From Mobula hypostoma (taxonomy: Eukaryota): DNA of 64,000 nt. The notes under the pieces were generated by a model. The model made no database searches. It saw nothing but the letters and a program-made list of their open reading frames with translations, and was not told the origin of the DNA. The DNA lies in assembly GCF_963921235.1 (NCBI RefSeq), contig NC_086109.1, forward strand, positions 2,790,001-2,854,000. Direction: 5' to 3'. Positions 10,613-39,344 of this stretch are shown here, in pieces (the first letter of the stretch is position 1; every line of letters starts with the position of its first letter). The position numbers and the translations under genes were made by a program.

Positions 10613-10747
10613 CAGTGCCAGATGCAGTGATCCTGGTGATCAGATTGTTCGTGGTGGGGACCCTCCTGATCTTTGCTCTCACTGTGATCCTCATGGTCAC
10701 ACGGAGGAGAAGACCTGAGGGAAGGGAAGTAACTTCAGGGACTGAAG
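10613..10747 (+). CDS. Receptor A, transmembrane exon
   Basis: Acceptor gttacAG. Encodes PVPDAVILVIRLFVVGTLLIFALTVILMVTRRRRPEGREVTSGTE (hydrophobic span plus RRRR stop-transfer). Donor is AG|GCAAGT (GC type); 135 bp, phase 1/1. Confidence 0.8.
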
Positions 10748-10905
10748 GCAAGTCGATCTGACACCCTGTCGTTGAGTCTGGTATTTGGGGGAGGGAGAGA
10801 GAGGGGATGGGCAGGGGGGTGACAACAGGGGTGGGAGAGAGGGGTTAGATAAAGTGGGGAATGGTTTTAGTACAGACCCTGTCACCTCTCCTTTCTGTCC
10901 CACAG

Positions 10906-11063
10906 ACCAAGCGGAGACGGACATCATTTACACAAATCTTCAGAGGATGCAGAAGAATCACAGTGTCTGGCAGCCCCCCAAGGGGAATGACAGGGTAATG
11001 ACAGACACGTTACCCCTGGAAAGAGGCCACTCCGGGTCACTCTCCCTCCTCGGGGCAGACTAA
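10906..11063 (+). CDS. Receptor A, cytoplasmic exon (3' end uncertain)
   Basis: Acceptor ctttctgtcccacAG. Phase-1 reading DQAETDIIYTNLQRMQK...GAD* contains the ITIM-like IIYTNL. An internal donor at 10995 is possible. Confidence 0.7.
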
Positions 11064-11269
11064 ACATAAGGCCTACATGTAATCTGCACAATCCCAGGAT
11101 CAACCACAGGTCCCCGTCACCGGAGATCATTCCAACCACCACTGTGGAACTCAGCAGCGCACACACGGGGGCACAGCAAGATCCCACGTACCACTGAGGA
11201 GTCAACTGAAACTTTGCCTCAGTGATCTCCAGGCCTGGTCAGGCAGATCGAACAGCAATTGTACACACT

Positions 11270-11520
11270 GCACAGTCACTGAGTGCACTGTCCCCTCACA
11301 CCCGGTCACTGTCCCTCACACACAGTCACTGGGGTACACTGTCACCCCACACACAGTCACTGGGGAACACTGTCACCCCACACACAGTCACTGGGGTACA
11401 CTGTCCCTCACACACCCGGTTACTGGGGTACACTGTCACCCCACACAAAGTCACTAGGGTACACTGTCCATCACACACATCCAGTGACTGGGGTACTCTG
11501 CCCCCACACACCCGGTCCAC
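11270..11520 (+). repeat. ~30-bp minisatellite (CACACAGTCACTGGGGTACACTGTCACCCC-like) in the 3' region; diverged paralog ~39870-40140
   Basis: Tandem copies visible directly. Confidence 0.85.
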
Positions 11521-11689
11521 CCGGTGTGTACATTTCCGATGATCAGTCGTGGATTTAATATTTGTGTCGTTGGCAGTGTGTGAGTTCATTCCGAATGCAC
11601 TGAGAATGAGACCGTGTTGATGCTGGGTTAGTATCACTGTTTGTCAGTTGATTGGTGCTGATGGGGTGATCTGAGTTTCCATCATTGTG

Positions 11690-12130
11690 TGTCGCTTTGC
11701 ATGTCCAGGTCTTTTGTGTCCATGTGTCACGTGTCGATGTGCCCAGTCTCAATGTCTCCCCTCTCCAGAGTCCTTGTCTCTGTATCCAGTCTCCATGTCC
11801 TGTCACTAGGTCCTGGTCTATATCTCCCTGTCTCTGTGTCTTGTCTCCTGGTCCCGGTCTGTATCTCCTTGCTTCTGTGTCCTCGTCTAAATCTCCCTGC
11901 CTCTGTGTCCTCATCTGTATCTCCCTGTCCCAGGGTCCTGGTCTGTATCTCCCTATCTCGATGTCCTGTCTCCGGCTCCCAGTCTGTATCTCCTTGTTTC
12001 TGTGTGCTGTCTCCAGGTCCTGTCTCTGTGTTCTGGTCTCGATCTCCCTGACTGGGTCCTGGACTCTATTTCCCTGTCTGTGTTTCCCAGTCTCCAAGAA
12101 TTCCTGACACAGTGTGTCCTGTCCCTGTTT
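11690..12130 (+). repeat. Pyrimidine-rich degenerate tandem repeat (GTCCTGGTCTGTATCTCCCT-like); paralog ~40330-40770
   Basis: Low-complexity repeats generate the overlapping spurious ORFs at 11555-12107. Confidence 0.7.
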
Positions 12131-12290
12131 CCCTTAAGTTGCCCAGAGCTGACAGGTTCTGTTTCTTTTGTAGTTTGCTGGTCCGGAGGTCGTTGCCGAG
12201 ACTAATCCCATTGAGTATGCTGCAGTGATGCACCATGCCAGACCCCCCATGGATGGGCTGAGGACAGAACCCCTGGACAGTATCCTGTAG

Positions 12291-12906
12291 CAGGATCTCC
12301 CTGTGGCCACACATTTTAATTGCCAGTGCCATTCCCATTCTGATACGTCTATCCACGGCCTCCTCTACTGTCAAGATGAAGCCACACTCAGGTGGGAGGA
12401 ACAACACCTTATATTCCGTCTGGGTAGCCTCCAACCTGATGGCATGAACATCGACTTCTCTAACTTCCGTTAATGCCCCTCCTCCCCCTCATACCACATC
12501 CATTATTTATTATATATATATATACATATTCTTTTTCTCTCTCTCCTTTTTCTCCCACTATCCATCTCACTATACTCCTTGTCCATCCTCTGGGCTTCAC
12601 CTCTCCACCTTTCTTTCTCCCTCAGTCTCCTGTCCCATGATCATCTCATATCCCCTTTGCCAATCACCTGTCCAGCTCTTGGCTCCATCCCTCCCCCTCC
12701 TGTCTTCTCCTATCATTTTGGATCTCCCCCTCCCCCTCCCACTTTCAAATCTCTTACTAGCTCTTCTTTCAGTTAGTCCTGACGAAGGGTCTTGGCCCGA
12801 AATGTCGACTGTACTTCTTCTTATAGATGCTGCCTGGCCTGCTGCGTTCACCAGCAACTTTTATGTGTGTTGCTTGAAATCCCAGCATCAGCTAATTTCC
12901 TCATGT
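12291..12906 (+). mobile_element. Copy-A-specific 5'-truncated Penelope-like element with 8-bp TSD
   Basis: TCCTGTAG at 12283-90 and 12907-14; empty site in B (~40925-32). The open frame QDLPVATHFN..HGLLYC..EEQHLIFRLGSLQPDGMNIDFSNFR* matches the end of the GIY-YIG ORF at 50351-50677. Confidence 0.9.
12775..12810 (+). ncRNA. Minimal hammerhead-ribozyme-like motif in the Penelope pseudo-LTR
   Basis: AGTC-CTGACGA-AGGGTCTTGGCCC-GAAA-TGTC-GACT: helix I AGTC/GACT plus the CUGANGA and GAAA cores. Confidence 0.5.
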
Positions 12907-14240
12907 TCCTGTAGTCTAGGATGGATCGTCCGTCTCTCGGCACCGGTACTAGGAGGGTACGGACTCTTTGAGAAATCTGCATGTGGAACGGTGGCTTGGA
13001 GATGCAGGTTTCCTCTGGGTCCCACTGTTGTGGTGAGGGGTGAGGTCTATGGGACAACAGCATGGCTGCTCTTTGCTGCTGTGCTTTGTAAGTGTTGAAT
13101 GTTAGTTCAATAATAGTCTCCAGTTTTGTCTGGTGGAAGAGATTTTGTCAGAATATTCCCCTGTAGAGTATCACCTTGATTAATCCTACTCAAACAGTAG
13201 TTAATAATTAAATGAATAATGTGAGCCTGTGCCCAGTTTCCAAGTGCTTACCACTCTCCCACCTTGAGTGAATTGTTCTCAAACACTGGTTCACACCGAG
13301 GGTGCGGAATTATCACTGGGGAAAGATGGGGATCCAAGAGACTCTGTCAAGCTTCTACCAGAAATCAGGAAGGGAAGGAAGAGTGTGGAGGGGAGCAGAT
13401 TTCAGGCTGCCATTGGTTTTACGAGGAACGGCTATGAGGTGGGACTCAGTGGAGAACAGGGATTTAAGGGAGGGAGAAAAATGGAAAGGTTTAAGGGAGC
13501 AACAACACACACCAAGTGCTGGAAGAACTCAACATGTCAGACAGCATCTCTGCAGGAGAATAATAGTCAACGATTCAGCTGCCTGCTGCCTGAACTGCTC
13601 AGTTCCTCCAGCATGGAGTGTGTGTTGCCCAAGTTTCCCAGTATATGGGTGTGTCTCGGGTTTAAGGGAGAGGGAGTTGTTGGAAAGTGAGGAGAACGAG
13701 AGACAGGGATTTAATATAAACGATGCAGGGATACAGCATAGACAGGGAGTGACCGTGTTGTTCAGGATCTGGTCCAGTGATCTCATACACCCACATGACC
13801 ATTCGAGCTCTCTACACCTCACTAGGATGTGGAAGGCATGTCCAAAAGTTTAATCTTCTGAGATCCAAGGCAAGTTGGTACATTAATTACAAAGTGAGCT
13901 TGGTAATAGCAGGCAGAGAGTGATAGTGGGCTGTTGCTTTTGTGATTGGAAGCCTATGGCCAGTTTTGACCAATAGGGGTTGTTGCTGGATCCTATTTAT
14001 GTGCGTTGGATGTGATGTTTCATTGATTCGATTGTGTTTCTTGGATTTACTGACTGTGCCCTCAAGAGAATTAATCTCATGTTTGTATATGGTGACATAT
14101 ATGTACATTGATAATAAATTTATTTTGAATTTTGAATGTACATTAATGATTTTTGATATTAATGCAGGAGAGATCCAAAGACCTTGATGGAGATCTACAA
14201 TAGGGCAGGCAGAATAGACATGGAGGTCTGCAAATTTTTC

Positions 14241-14829
14241 ATAGAACCATAGAAACATCGCAAACCTACAACACAATACAAGCCCTTCAGCCCACAATGC
14301 TGTGCCAAACATATCCTTACTTTAGAAATTATCTAGGGTTATCCATAGCCCTCTATTTTTCTGAGCTCCATGTACCTATCCAGGAGCCTCCTAAAAGACC
14401 CTATTGTATCCGCCTCCACCAACATCGCTGGCAGCCCATTCCACGCACTCACCACTCTCTGCGTAAAAAACTTACCCCTGACATCTCCTCTGTACCTACT
14501 TCCAAGCACCCTAAAACTGTGTCCTCTCGTGTTTACTATTTCATCCCTGGGAAAAAGCCTCTGATTATCCACACAATCAATACCTCTTATCATCTTATAT
14601 ACCTCTTTCAGGTCACTTCTCATCCTCCGTCACTCCAAGGAGAAAGGGCCAGGTTCACTCAACCTATTCTCATAAGGCATGCTCCCCAATCCAGGCAACA
14701 TCCTTGTAAATCTCCTCTGCACCCTTTCTATAGTTTCCACATCCCTCCTGTAGTGAAGTGACCAGAATTGAGCACAGTACTCCAAGTGGGGTCTGACCAG
14801 TGTCCTATATAGCTGTAACATTACCTCTC
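14241..14829 (-). mobile_element. CR1 3' fragment, absent from copy B
   Basis: LQLYRTLVRPHLEYCAQFWS.. and MRSDLKEVYKMIRGID motifs; A/B similarity breaks at 14240/42263. Confidence 0.9.
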
Positions 14830-14832
14830 AGG

Positions 14833-15551
14833 TGTGGGGTTGACTACAGGGAACATTCTCAGCCTACTGAGAATGCCTACTCAGCCTACTCAGCCAACTT
14901 TGGCTCTCCACAGGTACACTTTAGCATTAAGCAACCAGTGATGTAAGAGCAAAAACCAGCTCAGAACTTAAATTAACAGCTGAATGACCTATTAGACTTT
15001 TCACATCAGCCAAAATCTTCAACTCACTTCGCAGAAAATAGAGCATCTTGCCATTAAAATATTCACCCTCTATGTCTAGAGATATGAACTGGCCATGGCC
15101 TGCCTTTCTAGGTACCCCTATTCTAACGGTCAGCGTGACTTCAGTCACATCACTGGTATCGCATTGCACCTGACCTTAATCTCTTTGGTATGCATAATAA
15201 AATATCTCACACCATGGCCTAGACAGACAATTAAGCAGCTTAATCAATCCTTACACAGCATTCATACAGCATTCCAATCCCAGAAGAGCCCCCAAAAATT
15301 GAACCCTCTCACTGTGACTTGTAACAAACTTGGCTGGTTAACTAACTCTGGCTAATAGCCACGTGACTCAGCTTTGCATGGGTAATGGTGAGAAAGCCAC
15401 CCTCAATAAGTTTCATACGACTAAGGTCGATATGATTTGGTTTCAGCAGATACTACAACTTTGACACTCACAGAAAAACGGCTAAAATGAAAATACGTCA
15501 CAGCATAGCCGTAGAAATATAGTAAAATAGGGCCTTAGCCTGGTCATTACA
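14833..15551. mobile_element. Solo LTR (TG...CA, 4-bp TSD CAGG)
   Basis: cagg|TGTGGGG ... CATTACA|cagg; splits a CR1 3' tail. Confidence 0.65.
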
Positions 15552-15670
15552 CAGGTAAATATGTCGAGTGTGATCAGGTGTTGGATGGTCATCATGGATA
15601 TGATGGGCTGAAAAGCCTGTTTCTGTGCTGTGTGTCTCTATGACTCCATCCTATTTGACTCCTTTCACGA

Positions 15671-18600
15671 TGTTACACATCCCGTGAGCTTGATGTAATT
15701 ACCTTGTGAGCATTATGTCATTATCTCGTGATGGTCATAATTTAATGGTGTCATGATAGCGGGGTGATGTGATGTCACTTGATAGCATGCTCCAGACGGT
15801 ATTTAAACATAGTCCGCCAGTGTGACGCAGTTCTCATTTTTATTTTTAGTGCGACGTTGTTGTTGCCGGTCGGATGTTTGTTGCACTTTTATTTTTCCTT
15901 TACCGTCCAGTATCAGAGACTAAAGGCATGACCAGAGTTCTCCAAGTTCAAAGGATTGGGTAAAGTTAATGTCGTTCAGCGTCTTGGGAATGATCAACCT
16001 TTTTGAATCTTTGTTCAGGAATTGTGGCATGCACATTTGAATGAAACTGCTGCAAGGTTGGGAAGATTTTGGAAAGGAGCAAAAATAACAGGGTTGTTAT
16101 CATGGGTGACTTTAACGTCCCTAATATTGATTGGCACCTGATTAGTTCCAAGGGTTTAGATGGGGCAGAGTTTGTTAAGTGTGTCCAGGACGGATTCCTG
16201 TCACAGTATGTGGACAGGCCGACTAGGGGGAATGCCATACTAGATCTAGTACTAGGTAAGGAACCGGGTCAGGTCACAGATCTATCAGGGGGTGAGCATC
16301 TGGGGGACAGTGACCACCACTCCCTGGCCTTTAGCATTATCATGGAAAAGGGTAGAATCAGAGAGGACAGGAAAATTTTTAATTGGGGGAGGGCAAATTA
16401 TGAGGCTATAAGGCTAGAACTTGTGGGTGTGAATTGGGATGATGTTTTTGCAGGGAAATGTACTATGGACATATGGTTGATGTTTAGAGATCTCTTGCAG
16501 GATGTTAGGGATAAATTTGTCCCAGTGAGGAAGATAAAGAAAGGTAGGGTGAAGGAACCATGGGTGACAAGTGAGGTGGAAAATCTAGTCAGGTGGAAGA
16601 AGGCAGCATACATGAGGTTTAGGAAGCAAGGATCAGATGGGTCTATTGAGGAATATAGGGAAACAAGAAAGAAGCTTAAGAAGGGGCTGAGAAGAGCAAG
16701 AAAGGGGCATGAGAAGGCATTGGCGAGTAGGGTAAAGGAAAACCCCAAGGCATTCTTCAATTATGTGAAGAACAAAAGGATGACAGGAGTGAAGGTAGGA
16801 CCAATTAGAGATAAAGGTGGGAAGATGTGTCTGGATGCTGTGGAAGTGAGGAAGGTCTTCAATGAATACTTCTCTTCGGTATTCACCAATGAGAGGGAAC
16901 TTGATGATGGTGAGGACAATATGAGTGAGGCTGATGTTATAGAGCATGTTGATATTAAGGGAGAGGAGGTATTGGAGTTGTTAAAATACATTAGGATGGA
17001 TAAGTCCCCGGGACCTGATGGAATATTCCCCAGGCTGCTCCACGAGGCGAGGGAAGAGATTGCTGAGCCTCTGGCTAGGAACCTTATGTCCTTGTTGTCC
17101 ACGGGAATGGTACCGGAGGATTGGAGTGAGGTGAATGTTGTCCCCTTGTTCAAAAAAGGTAGTAGGGAGAGTTCGGGTAATGATAGACCAGTGAGCCTTA
17201 CGTCTGTGGTGGGAAAGCTGTTGGAAAAGATTCTTAGAGATAGGATCTCTGGGCATTTAGAGAATCATGGTCTGATCAGGGACAATCAGCATGGCTTTGT
17301 GAAGGGCAGATCGTGTCTAACAAGCCTGATAGACATTTGAGGAGGTGACCAGGCATATAGATGAGGGCAGTGCAGTGGATGTGATCTATATGGATTTTAG
17401 TTAGGCATTTGACAAGGTTCCACACAGCAGGCTAATTCAGAAAGTCAGAAGGCATGGGATCCGGGGAAGTTTGGCCAGGTGGATTCAGTATTGGCTTGCC
17501 TGCAGAAGGCAGAGGGCGGTGGTGGAGGGGAGTACATTCAGATTGGAGGATTGTGACTTGTGGTGTCCCACAAGGATCTGTTCTGGGACCTCTACTTTTC
17601 GTGATTTTTATTAACGACCTGGATGTGGGGGGTAGAAGGGTGGGTTGGCAAGTTTGCAGATGACACAAGGGTTGGTGGTGTTGTAGATAGTGTAGAGGAT
17701 TGTCAAAGATTGCAGAGAGACATTCATAGGATGCAGAAGTGGGCTGAGAAGTGGCAGATGGAGTTCAACCCGGAGAAGTGTGAGGTGGTACACTTTGGAA
17801 GGACAAACTCCAAGGCAGAGTACAAAGTAAATGGCAGGATACTTGGTAGTGTGGAGGAGCAGAGGGATCTGGGGGTACATGACCACAGATCCCTGAAAGT
17901 TGCCTCACAGGTGGATAGGGTAGTTAAGAAAGCTTATGATGTGTTAGCTTTCATAAGTCAAGGGATAGAGTTTAAGAGTCGCGATGTAATGATGCAGCTC
18001 TATAAAACTCTGGTTAGGCCACACTTGGAGTACTGTGTCCAGTTCTGGTCGCCTCACTATAGGAAAGATGTGGAAATATTGGAAAGGGTACAGAGAAGAT
18101 TTACCAGGATGCTGCCTGGTTTAGAGAGTATGGATTATGATCAGAGATTAAGGGAGCTAGGGCTTTACTTTTTGGAGAGAAGGAGGTTGAGAGGAGACAT
18201 GATAGAGGTGTACAAGACATTAAGAGGAATAGATAGAGTGGATAGCCAGCGCCTCTTCCCCAGAGCACCACAGCTCAATACAAGACGACATGGCTTTAAG
18301 GTATAAGGGGTGGGAAGTTCAAGGGGGATATTAGAGGAAGGTTTTTTACTCGGGGAGTGGTTGGTGCGTGGAATGCACTGCCTGAGTCAGTGGTGGGTGC
18401 AGATACACTCGTAAAGTTTAAGCGACTACTAGACAGGTATATGGAAGAATTTAAGGTGGGGGCTTATATGGGAGGCAGGGTTTGAGGTTCCACACAACAT
18501 TGTGGGCCGAAGGACCTGTACTGTGCAGTACTATTCTAAGGTAGGTTTGTGCAGTGACCACCCTCCAGTCAAAAGGTCAGCTCCTTTATTTCCCCGTGAT

Positions 18601-18928
18601 TTCTTCGTACAAGACATCTCTCGTCTATGATCGGCAGATTCGTCATTACTTCGAAGGAATCGTTGTTTCGGGGAAGTCTCTCCTTAATGACTGTATAAAT
18701 CACATGGACTTTTGAATTTACCACCTTAAGTCTGTGCTTGGTTGAGAAATCATTAAGAACAGTTTATAAGTTGGATTGTTTTTTCGATACAGTCGCCTAA
18801 CTGTTAACTTCCGGTTAAGTTAGTCTTTCATTTACTTTTCGATGTTTTGAGCATAGGTTAATAAATGTTGTTGTTTATTTTGTAAAAACTTGACTGAAAT
18901 TCATCTCCATTGCTGCTGGTTCATAACA
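15671..18928 (+). mobile_element. Solo LTR interrupted by a 2.5-kb CR1
   Basis: Termini TGTTA...TAACA, flanks acga/acaa, empty site cctttcACAAgcacc in B (~42541-42555). TATA-like tatttaaa near 15800 and AATAAA near 18861. Confidence 0.75.
16062..18537 (+). mobile_element. CR1 LINE ORF2 (APE C-terminus plus RT), frameshifted
   Basis: ORF 16069-17340 contains IMGDFN, LDLVL, HLGDSDH, KSPGPDG, QHGFVKGRSC; then [15 protein letters not shown] and ORF 17623-18306. Confidence 0.95.
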
Positions 18929-21041: not shown

Positions 21042-21300
21042 ACCCCGTGTCAGGAAGATACATCATGGTTTATTCATTTTCATAGGCACTGCCTGACCCA
21101 TTGAGATCCTATAGCATTTTGTGTGTGTTGCTCATGGTTCTGAACATTACTGAGACCTTTGACCTCACCTGGACCCTCTCCTTGACCTTGGGCGTCCCAC
21201 CAGCTTCAGGTGGTGAAGGCGAGGAGAATCTGTGAGAGACGCCAGCATACATTACTTCTGGAATCATGGAGAGATGGAAGAGGTTCATCACACAGCTTAA
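21042..21300 (+). pseudogene. Decayed IgC2 exon of a third paralog
   Basis: Acceptor aacctcAG, then DPVSGRYIMV..LNITETFDLT..TSFRW*R..HYFWNHGE aligns with EPVSGANIMVQNITGTCNLT..TRFSWWR..QHFWKDGK. It has a 61-bp insertion, a frameshift and a stop; the upstream intron (~20270-21040) also aligns to 7730-8069. Confidence 0.85.
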
Positions 21301-21344
21301 CCCATGCATTAACAATATGATGGGACAGTATAGATGGAGCTTCA

Positions 21345-28085: not shown

Positions 28086-28140
28086 ATGAACACCAGGCAT
28101 CTGCTGATCTCCTGCTGGCTAACTCTCTGCAACTCACTCT
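28086..28140 (+). CDS. Candidate signal-peptide (leader) exon, possibly exon 1 of receptor B
   Basis: acaATG, reads MNTRHLLISCWLTLCNSL + 1 nt, consensus donor GTAAGT at 28141. Phase 1 matches the IgV exon at 32939. Confidence 0.5.
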
Positions 28141-28189
28141 GTAAGTTTGATTCAGAGCAAGTCTTTGTCTTTAAAATCCTTCTCTCCAG

Positions 28190-28440: not shown

Positions 28441-31400
28441 GGATTGGGAAGGATTGGCAGAGATGTGGAATTAAGTACATGTGACCCAGGATCCCTCAGA
28501 ACCCAGGAACTGGGATCTGGTCTGGAGGTGTTTCATGGGAAAAGATCCTGATGGGAAATCGCTGTAGGAATGATGGATGGTGGGGGCAGGAAGTGGTGGA
28601 GGGGCACTGGAATGGAGAAAGAGAGTGGAAATTGTTAACAGTCATCTCCCTTTTTGGCATCCACGCGCTGGTTTTCACTCTCTCTCGGCAGACAGACTGT
28701 CGATCTGTCAATAGCCCAAATCACAAAATTGGACATACAAGCAGTGAGAGAGAATGATAAAGAAAATCCTGATATCATTGCCAGAATCGGTTGTTAACCT
28801 GTAGAATGAGTCATAAACCTGAGGATTGAGATTGAGTACGAACACAGCAAAGGGTAACAGATATATCGTTGAAGAAAGCGAAAATGGAAAGTTGAAGGAT
28901 ATTAAGAACAGACTGTGAGAGCCGGAATCAGGACATGAAACAAACACAGCAGCAGGTACAACTGTAGTTCCCTTACAGACAGACGTGGGTCTTTGTAATG
29001 GGGAATGAAGGAACAGTAGAGGAAATAACCATGGCTTTTTGTGTGTCTTTGTGGAACACACAAAAACCTGCCAGAAATACAGGATACACAAGTGTTGAAT
29101 GCAAGTGTAGAAACAAAATCAATCAGCATCAATGATGAAATAACATCATGAAAATGGATAATTGACACAGGCCTGATGATCTCCATCCCAGAGTCTGTGG
29201 CAAGGTGTCAGTAGAGTTACTCAACTTTCTGGTTATAATCGGGCAAACTCTACAGTTTCAGGAATGGTTCCTACAGACTGTTTCAAAAAGGAGGGAGAGA
29301 GAGAAAACAGGGAACCACACATCTCCCCAGCTGACACTGGGAGCGGGGACAATGTTGGAATCTGTGATAATGGGTGAGAAATGGAAGCTGTAGGGGAATT
29401 GTCACAAAGATTCACCAGACTGGTTTCTGATGTGGTGGGTCTGACATGTCGCTAGTGTGGGTAATAGACTAGGCCTCTATTCAAAAAGTTCAAAATAAGT
29501 TTTATTATCAGAGTAGAGATATGTCACCACATACAACCCTGAGATTCTTTCTCTGCGGGCATACCTAGCAAATCTATAGAACAGTAACTGTAAACAGGAT
29601 CAATGAACAACAAACAGAACAAATGCAAATATAAATAAATATCAATAAATAACCTGTTCTTGAACCTGGTGGTGTAAGTCCTGAGGCTCTTGTACCTTCT
29701 ACCTGATGACAGCAGTGAGAAAAGAGCATGGCCTGGGTGGTGAGGATCTTTGATTATGGCAATGTTTCATGTAGATGCTTTCAGTGGCTGGGAAGGTTTT
29801 ATCCATGTTGTACTGGACCGAATTCGCTACATTTTGTAGGATTTTCTGCTCAAATACATGTTGTTCCCATACCAGGCCATAATGAAGCCAGCCAGCATAT
29901 GGTGGTAAATCACTGGGATTCTCCTGTGATCTGGAAATTCTTCTTTCATTGGTAGATTTCTAGATATTAAGGAGATCAAGGAAAATGGCAAGAAAATGTT
30001 TTAGTCACGATCAACTGAATATGTCGTGTGGTTCAATGGTCGCACGTCTGCTTCCTGCTCCTGCTCGTCATGTTGACACAAGCTCGGCAATGGAACAGCA
30101 GAGCAGAGAGTGTGAGTGTTTGCATGAGAGTGTAAGTGCATCTGTGTCTGGGTGTATGTGTGTGCGAGAGAGAGAAAGAACACGTACCACACAATGGGAA
30201 ACTTGAGTAAGGTGTATGTGTCAGAACTATGGGTTGTTTTTAAAGAAGAAAGGGATTTTATCAGTTTGTATGTGGATTGTATTTTCTCAGTGTCACCTCA
30301 TGGGAATGTAGTGTTCCTTCGATTGTGAACTTTTCGTGTCTAATGGTTTGTCTTTGAACAAAGTGGGTTTTCACTTTGTGTTCAGTGTCTCATTTGGGAT
30401 CAAGGGGATTGTTAATCTCTCCTTGTATTGATCACTTTTATTCAATTTGGGTTGATGTGCTTTCTTGGTCACTGTCTGAGTTGGAGAGACCAGGAGACTA
30501 TGCTGTTGATAAGGATGTCTGATTCGAATCTGTCAACCATCTCTACAGTAGCTGTTTTGATCAGGACAGGGTTGTCTACACACACACACTTCCTTGGGTC
30601 AACAACTAGATCTTCTGTCTTGATTATGTTGAGGTCTATGTTGTTCTGACACCATGACAAAAGCATCATGATCACTTTCCTGCAGAGTGAACTCACACAT
30701 ATGATCTTCAGTAGTTTGTTTAGATTTAGACAAATTCAGTTTGTACTCCTCCTGGTTATCGAGACCCCTGTCCCCTTCCTTGTTGCTCCTCTTCAACCTT
30801 CCAGATTTCCCAGCATTGGGGTTCTCCTCCCAACACAGTTTTATGGAATTTAAACTCAGTCTACCTCCCTCGTGATTGGATTCAGTGGAATTCTGATCAC
30901 AGTCTGTCCCAGTGGAACTGTGCTCTCCTTCTCCAGTACTAATGCCAGTGTCACAGGAACCGAAAGCCACACCAGGCTCCGAGTCATTCCTCCCTGATCC
31001 TATTAACGGTGTTAGCATGTGTTTGTGGGTTGTGTAATAATACAAAGTTCAAGACGTTTGTGGTCATGTTTGCGAATGTAACCCCGGTTGCTCAGTGTCT
31101 GGGGAGATTTTACACTCTGCGGCCATTTATTGATAACATCCTGTACCTAATAAAGTGGCCACTCAGGGTATGTTCATGGTCTTCTGCTGCTGTCGCCCAT
31201 CCACTTCAAGGTTCAAGGTGTTGTGCATCAGAGATGTTCTTCTCCACAGCACTGTTGTAACGTGTGGGTATTTGAGTTTCTGTCACCTTCCTGTCAGCTT
31301 GAACCACTCTGGCTATTCCCCTCCAGCCTCTCTTATAAACAAGGCACGTCTGCACAAAGAAATGCAGCTCAATGGATTTTTTTAGTTTCAATCACCGTTA

Positions 31401-32938
31401 TCTGTCGTATCTAGAGTTTGATGTGTGTGAAAATCCCAGCAGATCAGCATTGAGTTGCTGCCACATGATGGCTGATTTGGTATTTGTTAACGGGCAGGCG
31501 TCGGGTTGTATTGAATAAAGTGACTATTGAGTGTGATCCAGGCACAGCCCTGCAGTGGATTCAGTGACCAGCATCTCAGTGTGGAGAAGCCATCCGCAGT
31601 GAGACAGAGAGAGATACTGCAGGGAACTCGTACCTTCAACCCACCGAGTCTATGCTAACCATCGACCACCTGTTTACACTCATCCTACATTAACGTGTCT
31701 GGTCCAGACGGCGTACCTGGCCGAGTACTAAAGATCCGTGTGGTCCCACGAGCAGGAGTATTTAGCACTTTCTTCACTGTACAGCCACACGTGGCTGGGA
31801 AATGGGTGAGAACCAGAGAAGTTGCCCCAAACACACTCTGATCCATTTTTTAAAATTTCTCCTTCTCCATCGTATGATACAGGAGAGGGAAGCAGTCAGC
31901 AGTTCAGGACACATTTGTGGAATGAGAAAAGAGCCAACTTTTCAGGTCAAAGACTCTTCATTAGAACTGTGGAGAAGTAAAAACTATAGGGAAAGCGGGT
32001 GTGGGGGTGTCTCTGACAGGGTGCCATGGGGATAAGCTGGCTACAAGATTATCTGGTCAATGGCTGATTTGGAGCAGTTGGAACAGGGAGAACATGGACA
32101 AAAGGATATTGACGACAATGTATAGACGTGAACTATTGAACAGGAAGCCTGGTCCTGTAGGTCGGGCTAGACACCATCTCCACTACCACATCCAGCTAGA
32201 TTCTCTTACACCCTTCTGAAGCCAATCACCCCTGGTGGGGCACAGGCTGCTGACAGCAGCTCACTAGACACCTCTATCCATCTAAACAGGGAATTCTGAC
32301 CCTCTCGCACAACAGAAACTGTAGCATTGGACTGTACACCCTCTTTGCTCCAAGGTCTGATGAGGAGTGGAAGAGTCCTCACAGACAGACTCTAACTGGG
32401 ACTCCACCCTCACCACCTGACTCTGGACGTCCAGGCAACAGGTGAGGGTCGGACAGTGCAGAGTGTACAGGAGCAGCCGGTGCAAGGAACCCCCTGGGGA
32501 CGGGAGGTGCAGCCTGTGGGACATTTCCCAGAGATGGCTCAAGTTGCGCTGAACCAGCTCTTTAGGAGAGCTTGGGGGACCCAGATCCAGTGACAATTCC
32601 GGCTGAGTGGTCGTCACTGTGAGTCTGATCAGTCGACCTCCTGACCCCTGCACACACACAGTGAGGTTATCCCAGTATCTCATCCGCCCCCCCCCTACCT
32701 GACCACTGATATCCGGCTGCAGGCTGCAACTTCATTTCTGAGGGCCGGGTACAGAGAGTCTGGAGTCCCGATGAAGGGTCTCGGCATGAAACAACACTAA
32801 CTTTGCGCTGTCTGTCTCACAGGGCTGGAACAACAGGATGGGCCGCTTGGCTTCCTCCCATGTCTTTGATTTTCCCAGGTCTGATTCCTCTTCCTATCAC
32901 TGACCTCACCTACGGACTGTCTTGTCTTGTCTCCTCAG

Positions 32939-33259
32939 CTGGGACTGGGACTCCTCCCACCACTGTGACCGGAGCTCAGGGACACTCAGTCTCCTTACTT
33001 TTTGGGATCCCAGTCAGTCCAGACTTTGAGGTTCATTGGATTCGGGTATCGCCCAGAATCAAGATTGTGAAGTACTTGAATGGGAACATCAGCTACTTCA
33101 GTAATGAGCAGTACAAGAACAGGATAACCTTTCACCCTGGGAGCATCAGTCTGGAAATCCATGATCTACGGAGAGAGGACTCTGGTGATTATGAGGTGAT
33201 GTTTGCAGCTGCAAGTTCAGGAGCTGAAAATAAAACAACAGTGCGACTGGAGGTGTACG
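32939..33259 (+). CDS. CD2/SLAM-family-like receptor B, IgV exon
   Basis: Same splice sites and, by eye, identical sequence to 4342-4662. Confidence 0.9.
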
Positions 33260-36200
33260 GTGAGTGAGACCTGTCCCTGAAACACCCCTAATGGATGGGT
33301 GAGGGCAGATCCTGTGTGTTTCCCTGTTTACTGAACCTCACTGACTACCCGTGTCCAGAGCTGGGCTCACGGTCCCAGTGTAGTGAGGCTGAGTCAGTGT
33401 GAGTTTGGAGGATACACCCGCCACATCCACCAAGACTGAGACAGGAGCCAGAAGGGATCGAACCAACATTGGGGAATCTCATGTATCTGAGACAGAGGGA
33501 GCTCAGCACACAGGGAGAATGGACCTGGTGTGAATGGCCTGAACAGTCTGTATCTGTGGGTCACAGTTACAAACTGTATCTCCAGTCAAAGGCCTGCTCT
33601 GTCATGCTCAGGGATCCCAGTTATCCAGTCTGTTTCCCAGGACACTGCTTGTTAATTTCCCAGATTGAGGTCTGAGCTCAGCAAGGTGTTTATTCCTCAG
33701 CCTTCATGCTGTGCTGTGCTGAGTGAGACCCTGTGTATTCATTACACTGAATATAGTGTCCCAGTGAGTGACACAGTACACGGACACAACAGTACACGGA
33801 CACAACAGTACACTCACACACAGCAATATGGTTCCTGACTCACTCTAACAGTAATATCACATTCACAATAATCTCACTCAGCAATGTTTGGCTGAGAAAT
33901 CCTCTCTCCTCTGTTAGGACGTATTGTGTAGTTAGGGAATACACAAATATTAATCTCACCAGAACCCATCTTCAGACATGAAGGTGGATTGTAGATTGAA
34001 TTTAAAATGCAGCTCTGAACAGTAGTTTTCCTGTAGCTGTGGACTGGAGCTGATTGCAATCCAGACAATTCTGATTAACATTCATTTTGTGTGTCTGGAG
34101 TGTGGGTGTGAACGACAAGGTAGGTGAAAAATATATGTAGGGCCAAGGAAGCATTGTTGGTACATTGTAACGGTACAATTATCCAGCATTTACCACTGAT
34201 CTTTAGCATGTCAAATTATCATGTAATATTGAATCGGGAGTCTGCTTCATCCAAGATTGTCTCAATATGATGCCTGTTTTTGGTGAATCAGACATTTCTA
34301 TATCCACCGGCTTTGGTGTCTCTCCGTTGACTTCACGTTACAACGTCCTCCATCCCAGTGTTAATGTTCCCCAGTTGAAGGAGGAGAACATCAGAACATG
34401 GGAAATAGAACACAGAAGATAGAAAATCATGAACATGGGTTGGAGACAAAGACCTCCTCTGGGATCGAGTAGGGGAAGAAAGGGACTGAGGTTTACAAAA
34501 TTATGAGGGATACAGATCATGTAAATGCAAGCAGGATTTTTCCACTGAGATTGGGTCAGAGTAGAATTAGACGTCATGGGTTTAGGGTGAAAGGCAAAAT
34601 GTTTAAGAGGACATGATGGGGAACTTTCACGATGCGTGCTGAGCATGTTGTATGATCTGCCAGCAGAAGTGATGGATGTGAGTTTGATTTCAAAATTTAA
34701 AAGAAATTTGGATAGGTACATGAATGGAATGGTTATGGGGGGCTATGTTTTGTGTGCAGGTTGAGGTGACAAGGCAGATTAAGTAATCGGCATGGACTAG
34801 ATGGGCTGAAGGGCCTGTTCCTGTTCTGTAGTATTCTGGGAGTCTATGACTCTCTGAATCAGACAGTAGTCAACAAAACCTTTCAGACAATGAACCTGTT
34901 CTGAATATCATCTCTACAAAGGAGGGAGATCCGCAAGTTCTGCATCAGATCCAGCTGGAGATGGGCTCTTGTCTATACATTGGTCTCACTGGAATAGTGT
35001 CAAGAGTTAGAATCAGTGTGTCAGAGTGGGAGCAGGATGGAGAATCAAAGTGACAGCGACCAGAACTTCTGAGTCACAATTGTGCCTGAACTGAGATGTC
35101 CCTCAAGGTGGTTAGTGACACTGTGCCTGGTTTCTCAGTGGAGAGGAGGCCACCGTGTGAACACTGAGTGCAGTTCACTGCATTGGGAGTGCTTGTCAAT
35201 CACTGTTTCAGCTTTTGGTTCCCTGCATGGAGGGAAGGGAAAATGTGAAAGTTCATATGAAGCCCCCCTCCCGTGGATGTCCAGAAAGTGGAGTGGGTCG
35301 TGGAGTGGTGGGAGTTGTGGGTTTGGCAGAAGAGCAGAGCGAGGTGTTACTCAGGGAGAAACTGGTCAAAATATGTAAGAAAGAGGGAAGGGAGTGGAAT
35401 GTCAGTGGATCATCAAATTTGCGGATGACAGTAGTTGTGGGTATAGTGGACAGTGAAGAAGACTATCAAAGCCTGTAGCAGGATCGGGACCAGCGGGAAT
35501 AATGAGCCGAAAATTTGCAGGTTGAATTTAATGCAGACGAGTACGAAGCCTTGACCCTTGGAAAGTAAACCAGGGTGGGACATAAATGATGAGTGGTTGG
35601 GCACTCAGGAGTGTAGTAGAATAGAGATATCTGGGAATACAGATCCATAATTTCTTAAAAGTGGTATCACAGGTAGATAGGGTCATAAAAAAAGCTTTTA
35701 GCACATTGGCCTTCATAAATCAAAGAATTGAGTCCAGGAGTTGGGATGTTATGTTGAAATTGTATAAGACCTTGGAGAGGCCTAATTTGCAGTATTTGTG
35801 CAATTCTGGTCACCTACGTACAGGAAAGGTATCAATTAGGTTGAAAGAGTGCAGAGTATCAGGACTCAAGGACCTGAGTTATAGGGGAAGGTGGGGAAAC
35901 TTCTTCACTCAGAGGGTGGAACAAGGTGCAGGTGGAAGGGTTGGAACCAGGTTCGATTTCAATGTCTAACAGAAATTGGGATAAATATTGAAAGGGATGT
36001 GGAAGGTGATGTCCAGATGAGTATCAATGGGACTAGGAATGGACTAGATGGACTGAAGGGTTTGTTTTGGCACTGCAATGCTCTATGATTCAATGGAGTC
36101 TCATTGAAAGGACCAGGAAGCATAGATGTTGATGCACTGAATAGGGAGACGAGTGGGGTAGAAGGAGACGGACAGATGAACCTTACTGTTACTTTTGGTT

Positions 36201-36666
36201 GGAGAGGGTATGAGAACAGAGATGAAAGAAATGACATAGACTCAAACCTTCATCATAATCTGGGCAGGCAGTGTGGAGATGGAGAGACTGACAGAATAGA
36301 CTGGGCTGTGTCTTAGGTTGGACCAGGTTCAGGGCAGGTCAAGGCTGGGGCTCAGTCAGATTTCAAAGGGAAGCTGGCACCACACAGAGGAAGAACTAAA
36401 GACATGGAAATGGAGAGAATTCCTGGAATAGAGAGCTATAAACAGGAAATGGAGGAGAGTTTGTAGATGAGTGTGGGTAGTGCATGTGGGAACATCCCCC
36501 GGCAGCAAGTGAATGGTGAGGGAAGGTTTAAACCGTTGGGTAAAATTGAGGTGGGATTGGCTTGAAGTTCACTCTGGAGTGTTGGGGATGGGATGGGGGA
36601 GTTGGGGATTGAGGTGTCCACAAGGATCTCCTTTATTCATCTTCTATCTCTCCCTCACACCCTCAG

Positions 36667-36951
36667 AGCCCGTGTCAGGAGCAAACATCATGGTTCAGAA
36701 CATCACTGGGACTTGTAACCTCACCCTGACCTGCTCCGTGACCTCTGGCAACCACACCAGATTCAGTTGGTGGAGAGGAGAAGTTACAGGAGACAACAGC
36801 AGCCAGCACTTCTGGAAAGACGGAAAGACGATACAGGTTGATTGCATAGCAGAGATGGAGGATGTTGTGTACAGGTGTGAGGCCAGCAACCCCATCAGTG
36901 AGGACACCGCACAGGTCCGGCTGGGGGACGTCTGTAATCTGGACACATGTC
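36667..36951 (+). CDS. Receptor B, IgC2 exon
   Basis: Same splice sites and translation as 8070-8354. Confidence 0.9.
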
Positions 36952-39209
36952 GTGAGTGTCTGACGAAGATGTTGCAATTTAGTTAGGTCCCCCATCGCAG
37001 GAGTGTGAGACGGGACAGCATAGAAGAGCTTCATAAAAACATAAAAAATTTACAGCAGATTACAGACCTTTTGACCCACAATGTTGTGCTGACCATGTAC
37101 CTACTCTAGAAACTGCCTAGAAATTCCCTACAGCATAGCCCTCGATTTTTCTAAGCTCCATGCACCTATTGAACGATCTCTTAAAAGACCATATTGTATT
37201 CACCTCTACCACTATTGCTGGCAGTTCCATGCACCCACCACTTTCTGTGTGAACACTTACCTCTAACATCCCCCTTGTACCTACTTCCAAGCACCTTAAA
37301 CGATGCCCCTTTGTGTTAGCCATTTCAGTCCTTCGAAAAAGCCTCTGACTATCCACACGATCAATGCCCCTCATCATCTTATACACCTTTATCAGGTCAC
37401 CTCTCATCCTCCGTCGCTCCAAGGAGAAAAGGCCAAGTTCACTCAACCTATTCTCATAAGGCATGCTCCCCAATCCAGGCAGCATCCTTGTGAATCTCCT
37501 CTGCACCCTTTCAATAGTTTCCACATCCTTCCTGTAGTGAGTGAGGCGACCAGAACTGAGCACAGTACTCCAAGTGGGATCTAACTAAGTGTATCACCAC
37601 TGATTTTAATCCAGCTCCCTCACATTGGCCCTCATAACCCCCCTCCTCAAGTTCAGCCTCCACCTCCCTGACCACTCAGTGCCTCAGCTATCCTAAATAA
37701 TCCTTCCCTCCAATCTAATCACTCCCTCCCTCCAGCAACAGTGCACAGTTGATTCAGTGTGGACCTTCTGCAAAATGCACTGTAGTTCCTCACCCAGGCT
37801 GTGCTGACAAATATGAGTGGAGGCTTAAGTATAAAATCCAAAAACAAAGGTTACCTACAAAGTTAATAATCCTCTACAGTATCCTGTCAGACAGAATACA
37901 TACAAACTGGAGTTGCTAAGAAGGCATATGCTACATTAGCCTTCATCAATCACGGGATTGTGTTCAAGAGCTGAGAGGTAATGTTGCAGCTATATAGGAC
38001 CCTGGTCAGACCCCACTTGGAGTACTGGGCTCAGTTCTGGTCACCTCACTACAGGAAGGATGTGGAAACTATAGAAAGGGTGCTGAGGAGATTTACAAGG
38101 ATGTTACCTGGATTCGGGAGCATGCCTTATGAGAATAGGTTGAGTGAACTCGGCCTTTTCTCCTTGGAGTGACGGAGGATGAGAGGTGACTTGATAGAGG
38201 TGTACAAGATGATGAGAGGCATTGATCGTGTGGATAGTCAGAGGCTTTTTCCCAGGGCTAAATGGCTAACACAAGAGGGCACGGTTTTAAGGTGTTTGGA
38301 AGTAGGTACAGAGGAGATGTCAGGGGTAAGTTTTTTACGCAGAGAGTGGTGAGTGCATGGAATGGGCTGCCGGCAATGGTGGTGGAGGCGGATATGATAG
38401 GGTCTTTTAAGAGACTCCTGGATAGGTACATGGAGCTCAGAAAAATAGAGGGCTATGGGTAAGTCTTGGTAGTTCTAAGGTAAGGGCATGTTCAGCACAA
38501 CTTTGTGGGCCGAAGGGTCTGTATAGTGATGTGGGTTTTCTATGTTTCTATGTTTGAGAAGATGGGCAATTACAGTTTTGATTCCTCCTCCATTTTCTTA
38601 ATTCCTGCCACAAACATTTCCAAATGTGTCCGTCAACAGTATTCTTCTTTTGTGTCCCACTGGGAGCACCATGGAGTAGGAGGGGTTGGAGCGGAGTGTT
38701 GTGATCGTTACTGGAGGAAATAGGGGATGAGGGGACTGAGGAGTATTGGAGGGGAGGGGTGCGGGTCAGTGATGTAATGTTGATTAGAGGGAATGGGGGT
38801 TGAGGGGACTGAGAGGTATCAGAGGGGAGGTGATGGGTTTCGAGGTGAGTGATTTGATGGTGATTGGAGGGAATGGGAATGGAGGGATTGAAAGGTATTG
38901 GAGGGGAGGGGTGGGGTGGAGGACAGTGAGGTGATGGTGATCGGAGAGAATGAGGACTTAGGGGACTGAGGGATATTGGAGGGAATGGGGTGGAGGGACT
39001 GAGGGATGTTGGAAGGGAGGGGAGCGGGGTGGAGAGGTGGGGTTTGGAGGGGAGTTATGTGATGGTGATTGTAGGGTACTGAGGGACCGTGTTGAGGTGA
39101 CAGGGAGTTTTCTCTGACTGAGGAGGGATGGAGTGAATTCATCGATCCTGTGTCACTGGGAGCATGAGGACTGGATTCATCAGGAAGCCTCTTCTACTCT
39201 CTGTTACAG

Positions 39210-39344
39210 CAATGCCAGATGCAGTGATCCTGAAGATTGTACTGTTAGTGGTGGGAACCGTCCTGATCTTTGCTCTCACTGTGATCCTCATGGTCACACG
39301 GAGAAGAAGACCTGAGGGAAGGGAAGTAACTTCAGGGACTGAAG
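39210..39344 (+). CDS. Receptor B, transmembrane exon
   Basis: Encodes PMPDAVILKIVLLVVGTVLIFALTVILMVTRRRRPEGREVTSGTE; canonical donor AG|GTAAGT at 39345. Confidence 0.85.

What the first reader, a model, noticed from the sequence alone, without database searches (positions are those of the whole stretch)
10613..39344. Twin receptors with identical ectodomains but a relocated transmembrane basic residue (Arg in A, Lys in B)
Seen: the TM starts VILVIRLFVVG in A (AGA 10642-44) and VILKIVLLVVG in B (AAG 39233-35). Seven of the 11 differences I count in the 135-bp exon fall in these five codons, including two double substitutions (GTG/AAG and AGA/GTA) that leave each protein with exactly one basic residue, two positions apart. 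Known: an N-proximal TM Arg (NLIRM/NLVRI-like) recruits FcRgamma in FcalphaRI, GPVI, NKp46 and LILRA; a TM Lys typifies DAP12-coupled receptors, though usually deeper in the helix. Mammalian CD2/SLAM members do not signal this way. Inference: a paired-receptor system with the same ligand and different adaptor coupling on a CD2/SLAM scaffold in a cartilaginous fish.
Basis: partly seen in the sequence, partly recalled or inferred. Interest (0 to 1): 0.8.

Follow-up and report, generated by a model that had tools for sequence, protein, structure and literature searches.

The report
Devil-ray twin SLAM-like immune receptors
Two neighbouring immune-receptor genes of a devil ray share an identical outer part, kept so by DNA copying between them, but each has gained its own positively charged residue in the membrane anchor; this looks like a young activating/inhibitory receptor pair in a family where mammals have none.

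Summary
The two 135-bp transmembrane (TM) exons (10613-10747 and 39210-39344) differ at 11 bases. Seven of these lie in five codons and give VILVIRLF (A) versus VILKIVLL (B).

The genes are tandem CD2/SLAM-family receptors of Mobula hypostoma, already in RefSeq as automatic models. My six-exon model of B translates exactly to XP_062922454.

The identical ectodomains come from a 5.3-kb gene-conversion tract that includes introns. The TM and tail exons lie outside it and differ by about 6%, with dN/dS about 1.

Uncharged paralogs (LVIVLS) show that both basic residues are derived and were gained separately; neither was relocated. M. birostris has the same Arg-type and Lys-type pair, with its own homogenised ectodomain, so the split predates the two species.

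B is transcribed and spliced and carries an ITIM (IIYTDL) and an ITSM (TEYAAV). Its Lys sits at the outer edge of the helix, so DAP12 coupling is unlikely.

A has a GC splice donor after the TM exon, and RefSeq gives it a short tail without tyrosine motifs. No A transcript was found. A also lacks the NxxR motif of receptors that bind the signalling adaptor FcRgamma.

A paired-receptor reading is plausible. Coupling to specific adaptors is untested.

The parts
4342..4662 (+). Gene A, V-set exon (no cysteine); identical to B 32939-33259
   Evidence: AG acceptor and GTGAGT donor, phase 1. Pfam V-set 1.5e-10. 100% match to P0160/P0213.
8070..8354 (+). Gene A, C2-set exon; identical to B 36667-36951
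   Evidence: Splice sites read. An RNA contig of run X1 covers 8069-8354 with no differences and joins it to the TM exon.
10613..10747 (+). Gene A, TM exon (VPDAVILVIRLFVVG...RRRR), Arg codon at 10642-44; followed by a GC donor and an in-frame TGA at 10759-61
   Evidence: Identical to the TM of RefSeq XP_062922453 (P0160), whose model reads through the donor and ends GTEGKSI.
10906..10994 (+). Gene A, cytoplasmic exon 1 with ITIM-like DIIYTNL; 7 differences from B, all amino-acid replacing
   Evidence: Joints 10747|10906 and 10994|12174 are seen in RNA contigs, which carry B-type letters. Alignment.
12174..12290 (+). Gene A, last coding exon (NPIEYAAV; Ile where B has the ITSM Thr) with the stop codon
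12291..12906 (+). Retroelement insertion present only in A, directly after the stop codon, with an 8-bp target-site duplication (TCCTGTAG)
   Evidence: Very high repeat depth in all runs.
4024..9329 (.). Low-divergence (gene-conversion) tract A/B: 17 differences in 5.3 kb, introns included, against 3-6% divergence in the flanks. Corresponds to B 32620-37926.
   Evidence: Runs of 534 to 1011 bp have no difference.
28086..28140 (+). Gene B, signal-peptide exon (MNTRHLLISCWLTLCNSL). A's counterpart lies left of the window.
   Evidence: tblastn of P0160/P0213. GTAAGT donor.
32939..33259 (+). Gene B, V-set exon
36667..36951 (+). Gene B, C2-set exon
39210..39344 (+). Gene B, TM exon (MPDAVILKIVLLVVG...RRRR), Lys codon at 39233-35, GT donor
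   Evidence: The RNA contig of X1 carries the B-type letters at 10650, 10659, 10663 and 10707.
39503..39591 (+). Gene B, cytoplasmic exon 1 (ITIM GIIYTDL)
   Evidence: The RNA contig shows B-type letters.
40816..40932 (+). Gene B, last coding exon (ITSM NPTEYAAV) with the stop codon
   Evidence: The six B exons together translate exactly to P0213 = XP_062922454/5.

Best explanation
A and B are two tandem CD2/SLAM-family receptor genes (signal, V, C2, TM and two tail exons) of the devil ray Mobula hypostoma. They lie in a duplication of at least 14 kb that is older than the split from M. birostris.

Repeated gene conversion keeps the V and C2 exons and the intron between them identical. The TM and tail exons lie outside the tract and stay distinct.

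Starting from an uncharged ancestral anchor (DAVTLVIVLSVVG), each copy gained its own basic residue: Val to Lys in B and Val to Arg (plus Ser to Phe) in A.

B is an expressed inhibitory or switch-type receptor. It should signal through its ITIM (IIYTDL) and ITSM (TEYAAV). Its Lys most likely sits at the outer membrane edge.

A is the candidate activating partner. Its Arg lies 19 residues above the cytoplasmic RRRR. A weak GC donor after the TM exon favours a tail that stops four codons later and carries no tyrosine motif. By inference only, the Arg would dock on an acidic TM residue of an ITAM-bearing signalling adaptor.

Shown: gene structure, conversion tract, family membership, derived state of both charges, presence of both types in two species, and transcription and splicing of B.

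Inferred: that the Arg lies in the membrane, that A has a short tail, that A binds an adaptor, and that the two genes signal in opposite directions.
For: - The duplication spans 1-14240 vs 29002-42253. It holds a 5.3-kb tract at 0.3% divergence inside flanks at 3-6%.
- The six-exon B model equals XP_062922454/5 exactly. A equals XP_062922453 apart from that model's alternative splice sites.
- Ectodomain identity is 200/200 for M. hypostoma A vs B and 196/199 for the M. birostris Arg-type vs Lys-type. It is only 87% between species for the same type.
- The TM exon groups by type instead: 40/43 for Arg-types and 41/43 for Lys-types across species, against 39/43 for A vs B within M. hypostoma and 35/43 within M. 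birostris.
- Uncharged paralogs in Mobula and Hypanus carry LVIVLS or LVIGLS at these positions.
- An RNA contig joins the C2 exon to a B-type TM exon, and the tail joints 10747|10906 and 10994|12174 are seen in RNA.
- All 19 annotated relatives with an Arg near the N-terminal end of the TM lack tyrosine motifs in the tail; this count includes splice isoforms of single genes and truncated models. They include two older groups, one shared with stingrays and a sawfish (LLIR) and one also with skates (CGC[WR]LRA). The Lys-types keep both motifs.
- The M. birostris Arg-types have a second basic residue deeper in the helix (RLFKM, RLFVVR). This makes unaided membrane insertion marginal.
- The fold is that of the CD2/SLAM family.
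Against: - dN/dS of the TM and tail exons between A and B is 1.03 (16 replacing and 5 silent changes). The average pattern fits neutral drift.
- Nineteen (A) or 21 (B) apolar residues follow the basic residue. That is enough to span the membrane with the charge at the interface.
- No A-type TM exon was seen in any RNA contig or indexed run.
- A keeps intact ITIM-bearing tail exons. Its short tail is known only from an automatic gene model. Uncharged paralogs such as P0159 and P0011 have read-through models too.
- The two Mobula species are close relatives, so keeping one codon between them is weak evidence of constraint.
- Similar mismatch clusters occur in non-coding DNA.
- No adaptor could be examined.
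Confidence: 0.5

Rival explanations
1. One reading: both twins are adaptor-coupled. A's Arg would recruit FcRgamma and B's Lys would recruit DAP12, so one ligand would feed two different ITAM pathways.
For: Each protein has exactly one basic residue in the first third of a continuous predicted helix; in the B model the helix spans 223-252 and includes Lys229. Both types are kept in M. birostris. Receptors with a charged TM and a long ITIM tail are known, such as CHIR-AB and KIR2DL4 (PMC3601082).
Against: - A has LVIR, without the Asn of the NxxR motif shared by FcRgamma partners (PMC2413239).
- B's Lys is residue 5 of 26. The most favourable 19-21-residue span starts just after it.
- From general knowledge, DAP12 partners carry the Lys near the middle of the helix and have short tails. 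B has an ITIM + ITSM tail that is spliced in RNA.
- FcRgamma was not found in shark genomes in a 2014 survey (PMC4016189).
Confidence: 0.12
2. Neutral divergence: the cluster is one or two complex mutations outside the conversion tract. The basic residues sit at the membrane-water interface and have no signalling role. Both proteins act through their tyrosine motifs and are largely redundant.
For: - dN/dS is 1.03, with dS close to the intron divergence.
- Comparable clusters occur at 9862 and 13272 in non-coding DNA.
- The heptamer AGATTGT is present in both copies but offset by 5 bases, which would fit two compensating 5-base indels (read).
- The apolar stretch after each charge is long enough to span the membrane.
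- A keeps ITIM-like IIYTNL and IEYAAV.
Against: - Both double-hit codons produce a basic residue.
- Charges were gained again and again in the same helix segment among Mobula paralogs: R, K, R+K, R+R and E.
- Across the family, Arg goes with tails that lack tyrosine motifs.
- The ectodomain was homogenised while the TM stayed distinct, in two species independently.
Confidence: 0.2
3. A is a silent or decaying copy. Its ectodomain only looks intact because conversion from B keeps overwriting it.
For: - No A-type TM words were found in any run, and only B-type letters appear in RNA contigs.
- A has a GC donor.
- A retroelement is inserted at A's stop codon.
- The ITSM Thr is replaced by Ile.
- The Arg-type TMs of M. 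birostris have picked up further radical changes.
Against: - All five A exons in the window are open, with usable splice sites.
- RefSeq models a protein for A and for both M. birostris Arg-type genes.
- Contigs cannot show absence, and few tissues have been sampled.
Confidence: 0.15

Closest known systems
CD2/SLAM family (CD48, SLAMF6/NTB-A, CD2, CD58)
   Same: V domain without a disulfide followed by a C2 domain with extra cysteines, with phase-1 exons. The best fold matches have target-normalised TM-scores of 0.74-0.82. Profile E-values are 7.5e-16 for SLAMF6 and 3e-15 for CD2. B has the ITSM TEYAAV, and many relatives carry TIYAQV or TVYATV. NCBI names the relatives SLAM- or CD48-like.
   Different: By general knowledge, mammalian members have uncharged TMs and no activating/inhibitory twins. 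The membrane-proximal motif here is an ITIM. CEACAM1/CEA score almost as well by sequence profile.
Paired receptors with a gene-converted ectodomain (Siglec-11/16, CD300A/C, CEACAM1/3, KIR, LILR)
   Same: Neighbouring paralogs with a near-identical ligand-binding part and different TM/tail parts. The conversion tract stops in the intron before the TM exon, so the TM exon lies outside it (PMC5701461, PMC12447643, PMC5112662).
   Different: The pair sits on a CD2/SLAM scaffold in an elasmobranch. The ITIM-bearing member also carries a basic residue. The putative activating member still has intact ITIM exons downstream.
FcRgamma-coupled NxxR transmembrane class (FcalphaRI, NKp46, GPVI, LILRA2, PIR-A, OSCAR, Xenopus XFL TM1)
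   Same: An Arg a few residues into the N-terminal end of the TM. Annotated tails are short and lack tyrosine motifs (PMC2413239).
   Different: There is no Asn at position -3 (LVIR here; LLIR in the older ray subfamily). The helix is longer, with 19-20 apolar residues after the Arg. The TM sequences are not homologous, so any likeness is convergent.
Bifunctional receptors (chicken CHIR-AB, turkey TILR-AB, human KIR2DL4)
   Same: A basic TM residue combined with a long tail carrying ITIM/ITSM, as in B and in A if A is spliced (PMC3601082).
   Different: Those are C2-only receptors of the leukocyte receptor complex with a proven FcRgamma link (CHIR-AB1). Here the Lys is at the very edge of the helix and no partner is known.

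Membership tests
CD2/SLAM family | N-terminal V-set domain without the canonical disulfide, followed by one C2-set domain | tested here: met
   The V exon has no Cys. Pfam V-set scores 1.5e-10 and Ig_3 3.6e-06 on the C2 exon. The AF2 model has two beta-sandwich domains.
CD2/SLAM family | Two-domain fold closest to solved CD2-family ectodomains | tested here: met
   Foldseek ranks 1-6 are CD48, SLAMF6, CD2 and CD58, with target-normalised TM-scores of 0.74-0.82. CEACAM1 is rank 16 at 0.68.
CD2/SLAM family | Sequence profile closer to CD2/SLAM than to other Ig families | tested here: inconclusive
   SLAMF6 7.5e-16, CD2 3e-15 and CD48 8e-15 each match in one stretch. CEA (9e-18) and CEACAM1 (9e-17) score as well, over several domains. 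Pfam Receptor_2B4 matches 17 of 30 relatives.
CD2/SLAM family | ITSM (TxYxx[V/I]) in the tail (SLAM subgroup) | tested here: met
   B has TEYAAV. In A the Thr is Ile (IEYAAV). Relatives carry TIYAQV or TVYATV. Binding of SAP or EAT-2 cannot be tested here.
FcRgamma-coupled NxxR transmembrane class | Asn three residues before an N-proximal TM Arg (NxxR) | tested here: not met
   A reads V-I-L-V-I-R, with Leu at -3. Motif definition from PMC2413239.
FcRgamma-coupled NxxR transmembrane class | Short cytoplasmic tail without tyrosine motifs | tested here: inconclusive
   The RefSeq model of A stops at GTEGKSI by reading through the GC donor. The genome keeps open ITIM exons at 10906-10994 and 12174-12290. 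No A transcript was seen.
FcRgamma-coupled NxxR transmembrane class | Physical association with FcRgamma through its TM Asp | not testable with these tools
   No adaptor sequence of this species was available. A 2014 survey found no FcRgamma in shark genomes (PMC4016189).
DAP12-coupled receptors | Basic residue in the central part of the TM helix | tested here: not met
   B's Lys is residue 5 of 26 and 21 apolar residues follow it. The lowest-energy 19-21-residue span excludes it (the hydrophobicity scale values were recalled from memory).
DAP12-coupled receptors | Short tail without inhibitory motifs | tested here: not met
   B's tail has IIYTDL and TEYAAV, and both tail introns are spliced in RNA contigs.
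Paired receptors homogenised by gene conversion | Adjacent paralogs with a converted ectodomain and distinct TM/tail, maintained across species | tested here: met
   The tract spans 4024-9329 with 17 differences, against 3-6% in the flanks. The same Arg-type/Lys-type pair with its own ectodomain exists in M. birostris.
Paired receptors homogenised by gene conversion | Opposite signalling potential, with both members expressed | tested here: inconclusive
   B is expressed and has an ITIM/ITSM tail. A's tail form and expression are unknown.

The most novel reading that the evidence does not exclude
Elasmobranchs have built an activating arm inside the CD2/SLAM family, which mammals lack. On this reading, receptors with an N-proximal TM Arg and no tail tyrosine motifs pair with ITIM/ITSM receptors that share a gene-converted ectodomain. 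The Mobula cluster would then catch the birth of such partners from inhibitory genes: repeated new gains of TM charge (R, K, R+K, R+R, E) and loss of the tail through a weakened splice donor.
Probability: 0.35. Interest if true: 0.65.

Novelty: new variant of a known kind. Interest (0 to 1): 0.5.

Why it matters
Paired activating and inhibitory receptors are a recurring answer to pathogens that exploit inhibitory receptors. They are known for KIR, LILR, Siglec, CEACAM, SIRP and CD300, but not for the CD2/SLAM family, and they are poorly charted in cartilaginous fish.

If A is a working Arg-coupled partner of B, three things follow:
- The solution arose independently on another scaffold in the oldest jawed vertebrates.
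- We would have a very young example in which the steps can be read directly: a charge gained by a two-base change, a splice donor weakened, and an ectodomain kept in step by conversion.
- It would raise a testable question about which acidic-TM adaptor rays use, given that FcRgamma was reported missing from sharks.

If the charges are neutral, the locus is still a clean case of exon-bounded concerted evolution.

Tried and rejected
- **M. birostris DNA:** Polarisation therefore rests on proteins only.
- **RNA evidence for A:**
  - The single read-laying run showed only B-type contigs.
  - The second run search found no run holding more than half of A's TM-exon words, and none from the same species. 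This is no proof that A is silent.
- **Signal exon of A:** a scan for one upstream of 4342 gave only weak candidates. The real one, by homology to 28086-28140, lies left of the window.
- **Adaptors:**
  - Literature searches for ITAM adaptors or SLAM-family charged TMs in cartilaginous fish found nothing specific.
  - The scan's own notes gave no adaptor gene.
- **'Relocation' of one residue:** rejected, because the outgroups carry neither charge.
- **Purifying selection as the cause of identical ectodomains:** rejected, because the introns are identical too.
- **CEACAM membership:** considered and not excluded by sequence profile, but disfavoured by fold.
Full report
**1. Observation**

A is 10613-10747 and B is 39210-39344. 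Both are 135 bp, follow TTACAG, and start and end in phase 1.

They differ at 11 bases, and seven of these lie at 10636-10650:
- GTG/AAG gives Val/Lys.
- ATC/ATT is silent.
- AGA/GTA gives Arg/Val.
- TTG/CTG is silent.
- TTC/TTA gives Phe/Leu.

The peptides read VPDAVILVIRLFVVGTLLIFALTVILMVTRRRR (A) and MPDAVILKIVLLVVGTVLIFALTVILMVTRRRR (B).

Against the local non-exon divergence of 4.6%, seven differences in 15 bases has P about 2e-6 per position. That is about 0.02 after scanning the whole alignment. Two comparable clusters lie in non-coding DNA at 9862 and 13272. Clustering alone is therefore not proof of selection.

**2. What the locus is**

A self-comparison shows a tandem duplication, 1-14240 against 29002-42253. 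Binned divergence is 3-6% in most of it. It falls to 17 differences in 5.3 kb between 4024 and 9329, with runs of 534 to 1011 bp that have no difference at all. The V exon (4342-4662) and the C2 exon (8070-8354) lie inside this tract together with their intron. The 'identical ectodomains' therefore come from recent gene conversion. They do not come from purifying selection on the coding sequence. A patch of eight differences at 4773-5140 suggests at least two conversion events.

I derived the gene structure from splice sites and reading frames and checked it against public reads. In run X1 a 500-base contig joins 8069-8354 directly to the TM exon. The joints 10747|10906 and 10994|12174 are also present. 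That makes X1 an RNA data set. The contig carries the B letters at 10650, 10659, 10663 and 10707 and in the next exon, so the transcript seen is B's.

The six B exons are 28086-28140, 32939-33259, 36667-36951, 39210-39344, 39503-39591 and 40816-40932. Together they translate exactly to P0213, which is RefSeq XP_062922454/5, 'SLAM family member 8-like' of Mobula hypostoma.

A corresponds to P0160, XP_062922453, 'SLAM family member 9-like'. That model uses an alternative donor and acceptor pair (8358|10587) that adds REKPLLLSVTA. It also reads through the TM-exon donor to an in-frame TGA and ends GTEGKSI. A's signal exon lies left of the window.

**3. Family**

- *Domains:* the V exon matches Pfam V-set (1.5e-10) and has no cysteine. 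The best single-sequence match in the PDB is CD48.
- *Sequence profile:* a 30-member family profile hits SLAMF6 (7.5e-16), CD2 (3e-15) and CD48 (8e-15), each in one V-C2 stretch. It also hits CEA and CEACAM1 over several domains. Sequence alone is therefore not decisive.
- *Fold:* an AlphaFold model of B (mean pLDDT 74.7, ectodomain mostly above 90) has CD48, SLAMF6, CD2 and CD58 as its six best Foldseek matches, with target-normalised TM-scores of 0.74-0.82. CEACAM1 comes at rank 16.
- *Size of the family:* it is large in rays, skates and sharks. A search of 1.8 billion representatives gave 65 hits below 1e-10, though some are long unrelated multi-Ig proteins. NCBI calls the close relatives SLAM-, CD48- or Ly-9-like.
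- *Tails:* many relatives carry TIYAQV and TVYATV motifs.
- *Verdict:* a CD2/SLAM scaffold is supported.

**4. The tails**

B's tail has an ITIM-type motif (GIIYTDL) and an ITSM (PTEYAAV). A's downstream exons are open and encode DIIYTNL and PIEYAAV, so the ITSM Thr is Ile in A.

Over the 111 codons outside the conversion tract there are 16 replacing and 5 silent changes. This gives dN/dS = 1.03, with dS (0.065) near the intron divergence. The replacing changes are patchy: 6 amino-acid differences fall in the first 17 TM-exon codons and 7 in the first 18 tail codons. The 27 codons LIFALTVILMVTRRRRPEGREVTSGTE have no replacing change.

**5. Polarity and age**

Relatives with the same exon structure show the ancestral anchor. 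M. birostris P0165 and P0163 and Hypanus P0158 read DAVTLVIVLS. Hypanus P0011 reads LVIGLS. M. hypostoma P0159 reads LMIVLS. Neither basic residue is ancestral. Lys replaced Val in the B lineage. Arg replaced Val, and Phe replaced Ser, in the A lineage. 'Relocated' is therefore the wrong word; there were two independent gains.

M. birostris has both types:
- P0214/P0164 is the Lys-type (VILKIVLSVVG) with a long tail carrying IIYTDL and TEYAAV.
- P0215 is the Arg-type (VILVIRLFKMG) with a model that ends GKWI.
- P0166 is a second Arg-type gene (LVIRLFVVRT).

Ectodomain identity is 200/200 within M. hypostoma and 196/199 within M. birostris. It is only 87% between species for the same type. The TM exon groups by type instead, at 40/43 and 41/43 across species.

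The duplication and the Arg/Lys split therefore predate the two species. The ectodomains were homogenised independently in each species, and the TM exon escaped both times. This is the pattern of paired receptors such as Siglec-11/16, CD300A/C and the CEACAMs (PMC5701461, PMC12447643, PMC5112662). One caveat applies. The two species are close, so retaining single codons between them says little about constraint.

**6. Are the charges in the membrane?**

The model of B gives one continuous helix from residue 223 to 252, which includes Lys229. With a simple biological hydrophobicity sum (scale values recalled from memory, so a rough guide only), B's best 19-21-residue span starts just after the Lys, at about -4.5 kcal/mol, and is about 1 kcal/mol worse with the Lys included. 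A's spans with and without the Arg are equally good, at about -3.5 to -3.7.

So B's Lys is most likely at the outer interface, and A's Arg is ambiguous. The M. birostris Arg-types carry a second basic residue deeper in the helix. Their summed values are near zero or positive. They would need a partner, or they are decaying.

**7. Comparison with known adaptor-coupled receptors**

The FcRgamma-binding TM class is defined by an NxxR motif at the N-terminal end of the helix (PMC2413239). A has L-V-I-R, so that feature is not met. Any likeness is convergent.

By general knowledge, DAP12 partners carry a Lys near the middle of the helix and have short tails. B meets neither feature. A charged TM combined with a long ITIM tail does exist in the 'bifunctional' CHIR-AB, TILR-AB and KIR2DL4 receptors (PMC3601082).

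A 2014 survey reported no FcRgamma in shark genomes (PMC4016189). I could not examine any adaptor of this species.

On the positive side, 19 annotated relatives with an Arg near the N-terminal end of the TM all lack tyrosine motifs in the tail (this count includes splice isoforms of single genes and truncated models). They fall into three groups: the Mobula Arg-types, an 'LLIR' group shared by Mobula, Hemitrygon and Pristis, and a 'CGC[WR]LRA' group also found in skates. The Lys-types keep both motifs. This correlation is what an activating arm would look like.

**8. Is A alive?**

Against:
- No run holds more than half of A's TM-exon words, and none of the same species holds any.
- Only B-type letters appear in RNA contigs.
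- The donor is GC.
- A 616-bp retroelement with an 8-bp target-site duplication sits directly after A's stop codon.

For:
- All five A exons in the window are open and have splice sites.
- RefSeq models proteins for A and for both M. birostris Arg-type genes.

Contigs cannot show absence. Read-through models also exist for uncharged paralogs (P0159, P0011), so the short tail is not established.

**9. Verdict**

The sequence observation is correct. The genes are real and already annotated automatically as SLAM-like. The paired-receptor idea gains real comparative support. The proposed couplings (Arg to FcRgamma, Lys to DAP12) are not supported by the features that could be tested.

My best reading, at about 0.5, is a young inhibitory (B) and candidate activating (A) pair on a CD2/SLAM scaffold, with ectodomains kept in step by gene conversion. 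The rivals are:
- neutral drift with the charges at the membrane interface (0.2);
- a silent A copy refreshed by conversion (0.15);

This is a new variant of a known kind. The scan also noted other CD2/SLAM-like genes up to 1.4 Mb upstream and a Lys-plus-ITSM receptor elsewhere in this genome. I did not check those notes.

Noticed in passing
window 21131-21297 (+): A decayed C2-like exon with a stop and a frame break, 40-57% identical to the C2 exon. It lies between genes A and B and looks like a relic of a further family member.
   Followed up: partly
window 12291-12906: A retroelement fragment inserted only in copy A, with an 8-bp target-site duplication (TCCTGTAG) that includes A's stop codon. 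It has extremely high depth in all runs, so it belongs to an abundant repeat family.
   Followed up: partly
window 8355-8360 and 10585-10613: RefSeq models of the Arg-type genes in both Mobula species use a donor 4 bases downstream and an acceptor 26 bases upstream of the ones seen in B's RNA. This adds REKPLLLSVTA to the stalk. Both copies have all four sites, so why usage would differ is unexplained.
   Followed up: partly
window 10679-10696, contig of run X3 (a related species): An RNA contig of a relative lacks 18 bases of the TM exon. This matches the M. birostris paralog P0165 (LIFALTWRRR), whose anchor is six residues shorter.
   Followed up: no
proteins P0163, P0215 and P0166 (M. birostris paralogs): Further charges appear in the same helix: Gly to Glu in P0163, Arg plus Lys in P0215, and two Arg five residues apart in P0166. 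From memory, the last spacing recalls the Arg/Lys pair of the T-cell receptor alpha chain.
   Followed up: partly
window 55003-56806 and 58279-58626: A tandem array of 31 copies of a 58-bp unit (88% matches) and a 33/67-bp CT-rich array.
   Followed up: partly
window 11250-11550 and 11660-12100: The intron between the two tail exons holds degenerate short tandem repeats. These explain the high apparent A/B divergence there (13-17%).
   Followed up: no
window 13272-13276 and 9862-9872: Two more tight clusters of A/B mismatches in non-coding DNA. Multi-base events therefore occur at this locus without coding consequences.
   Followed up: partly
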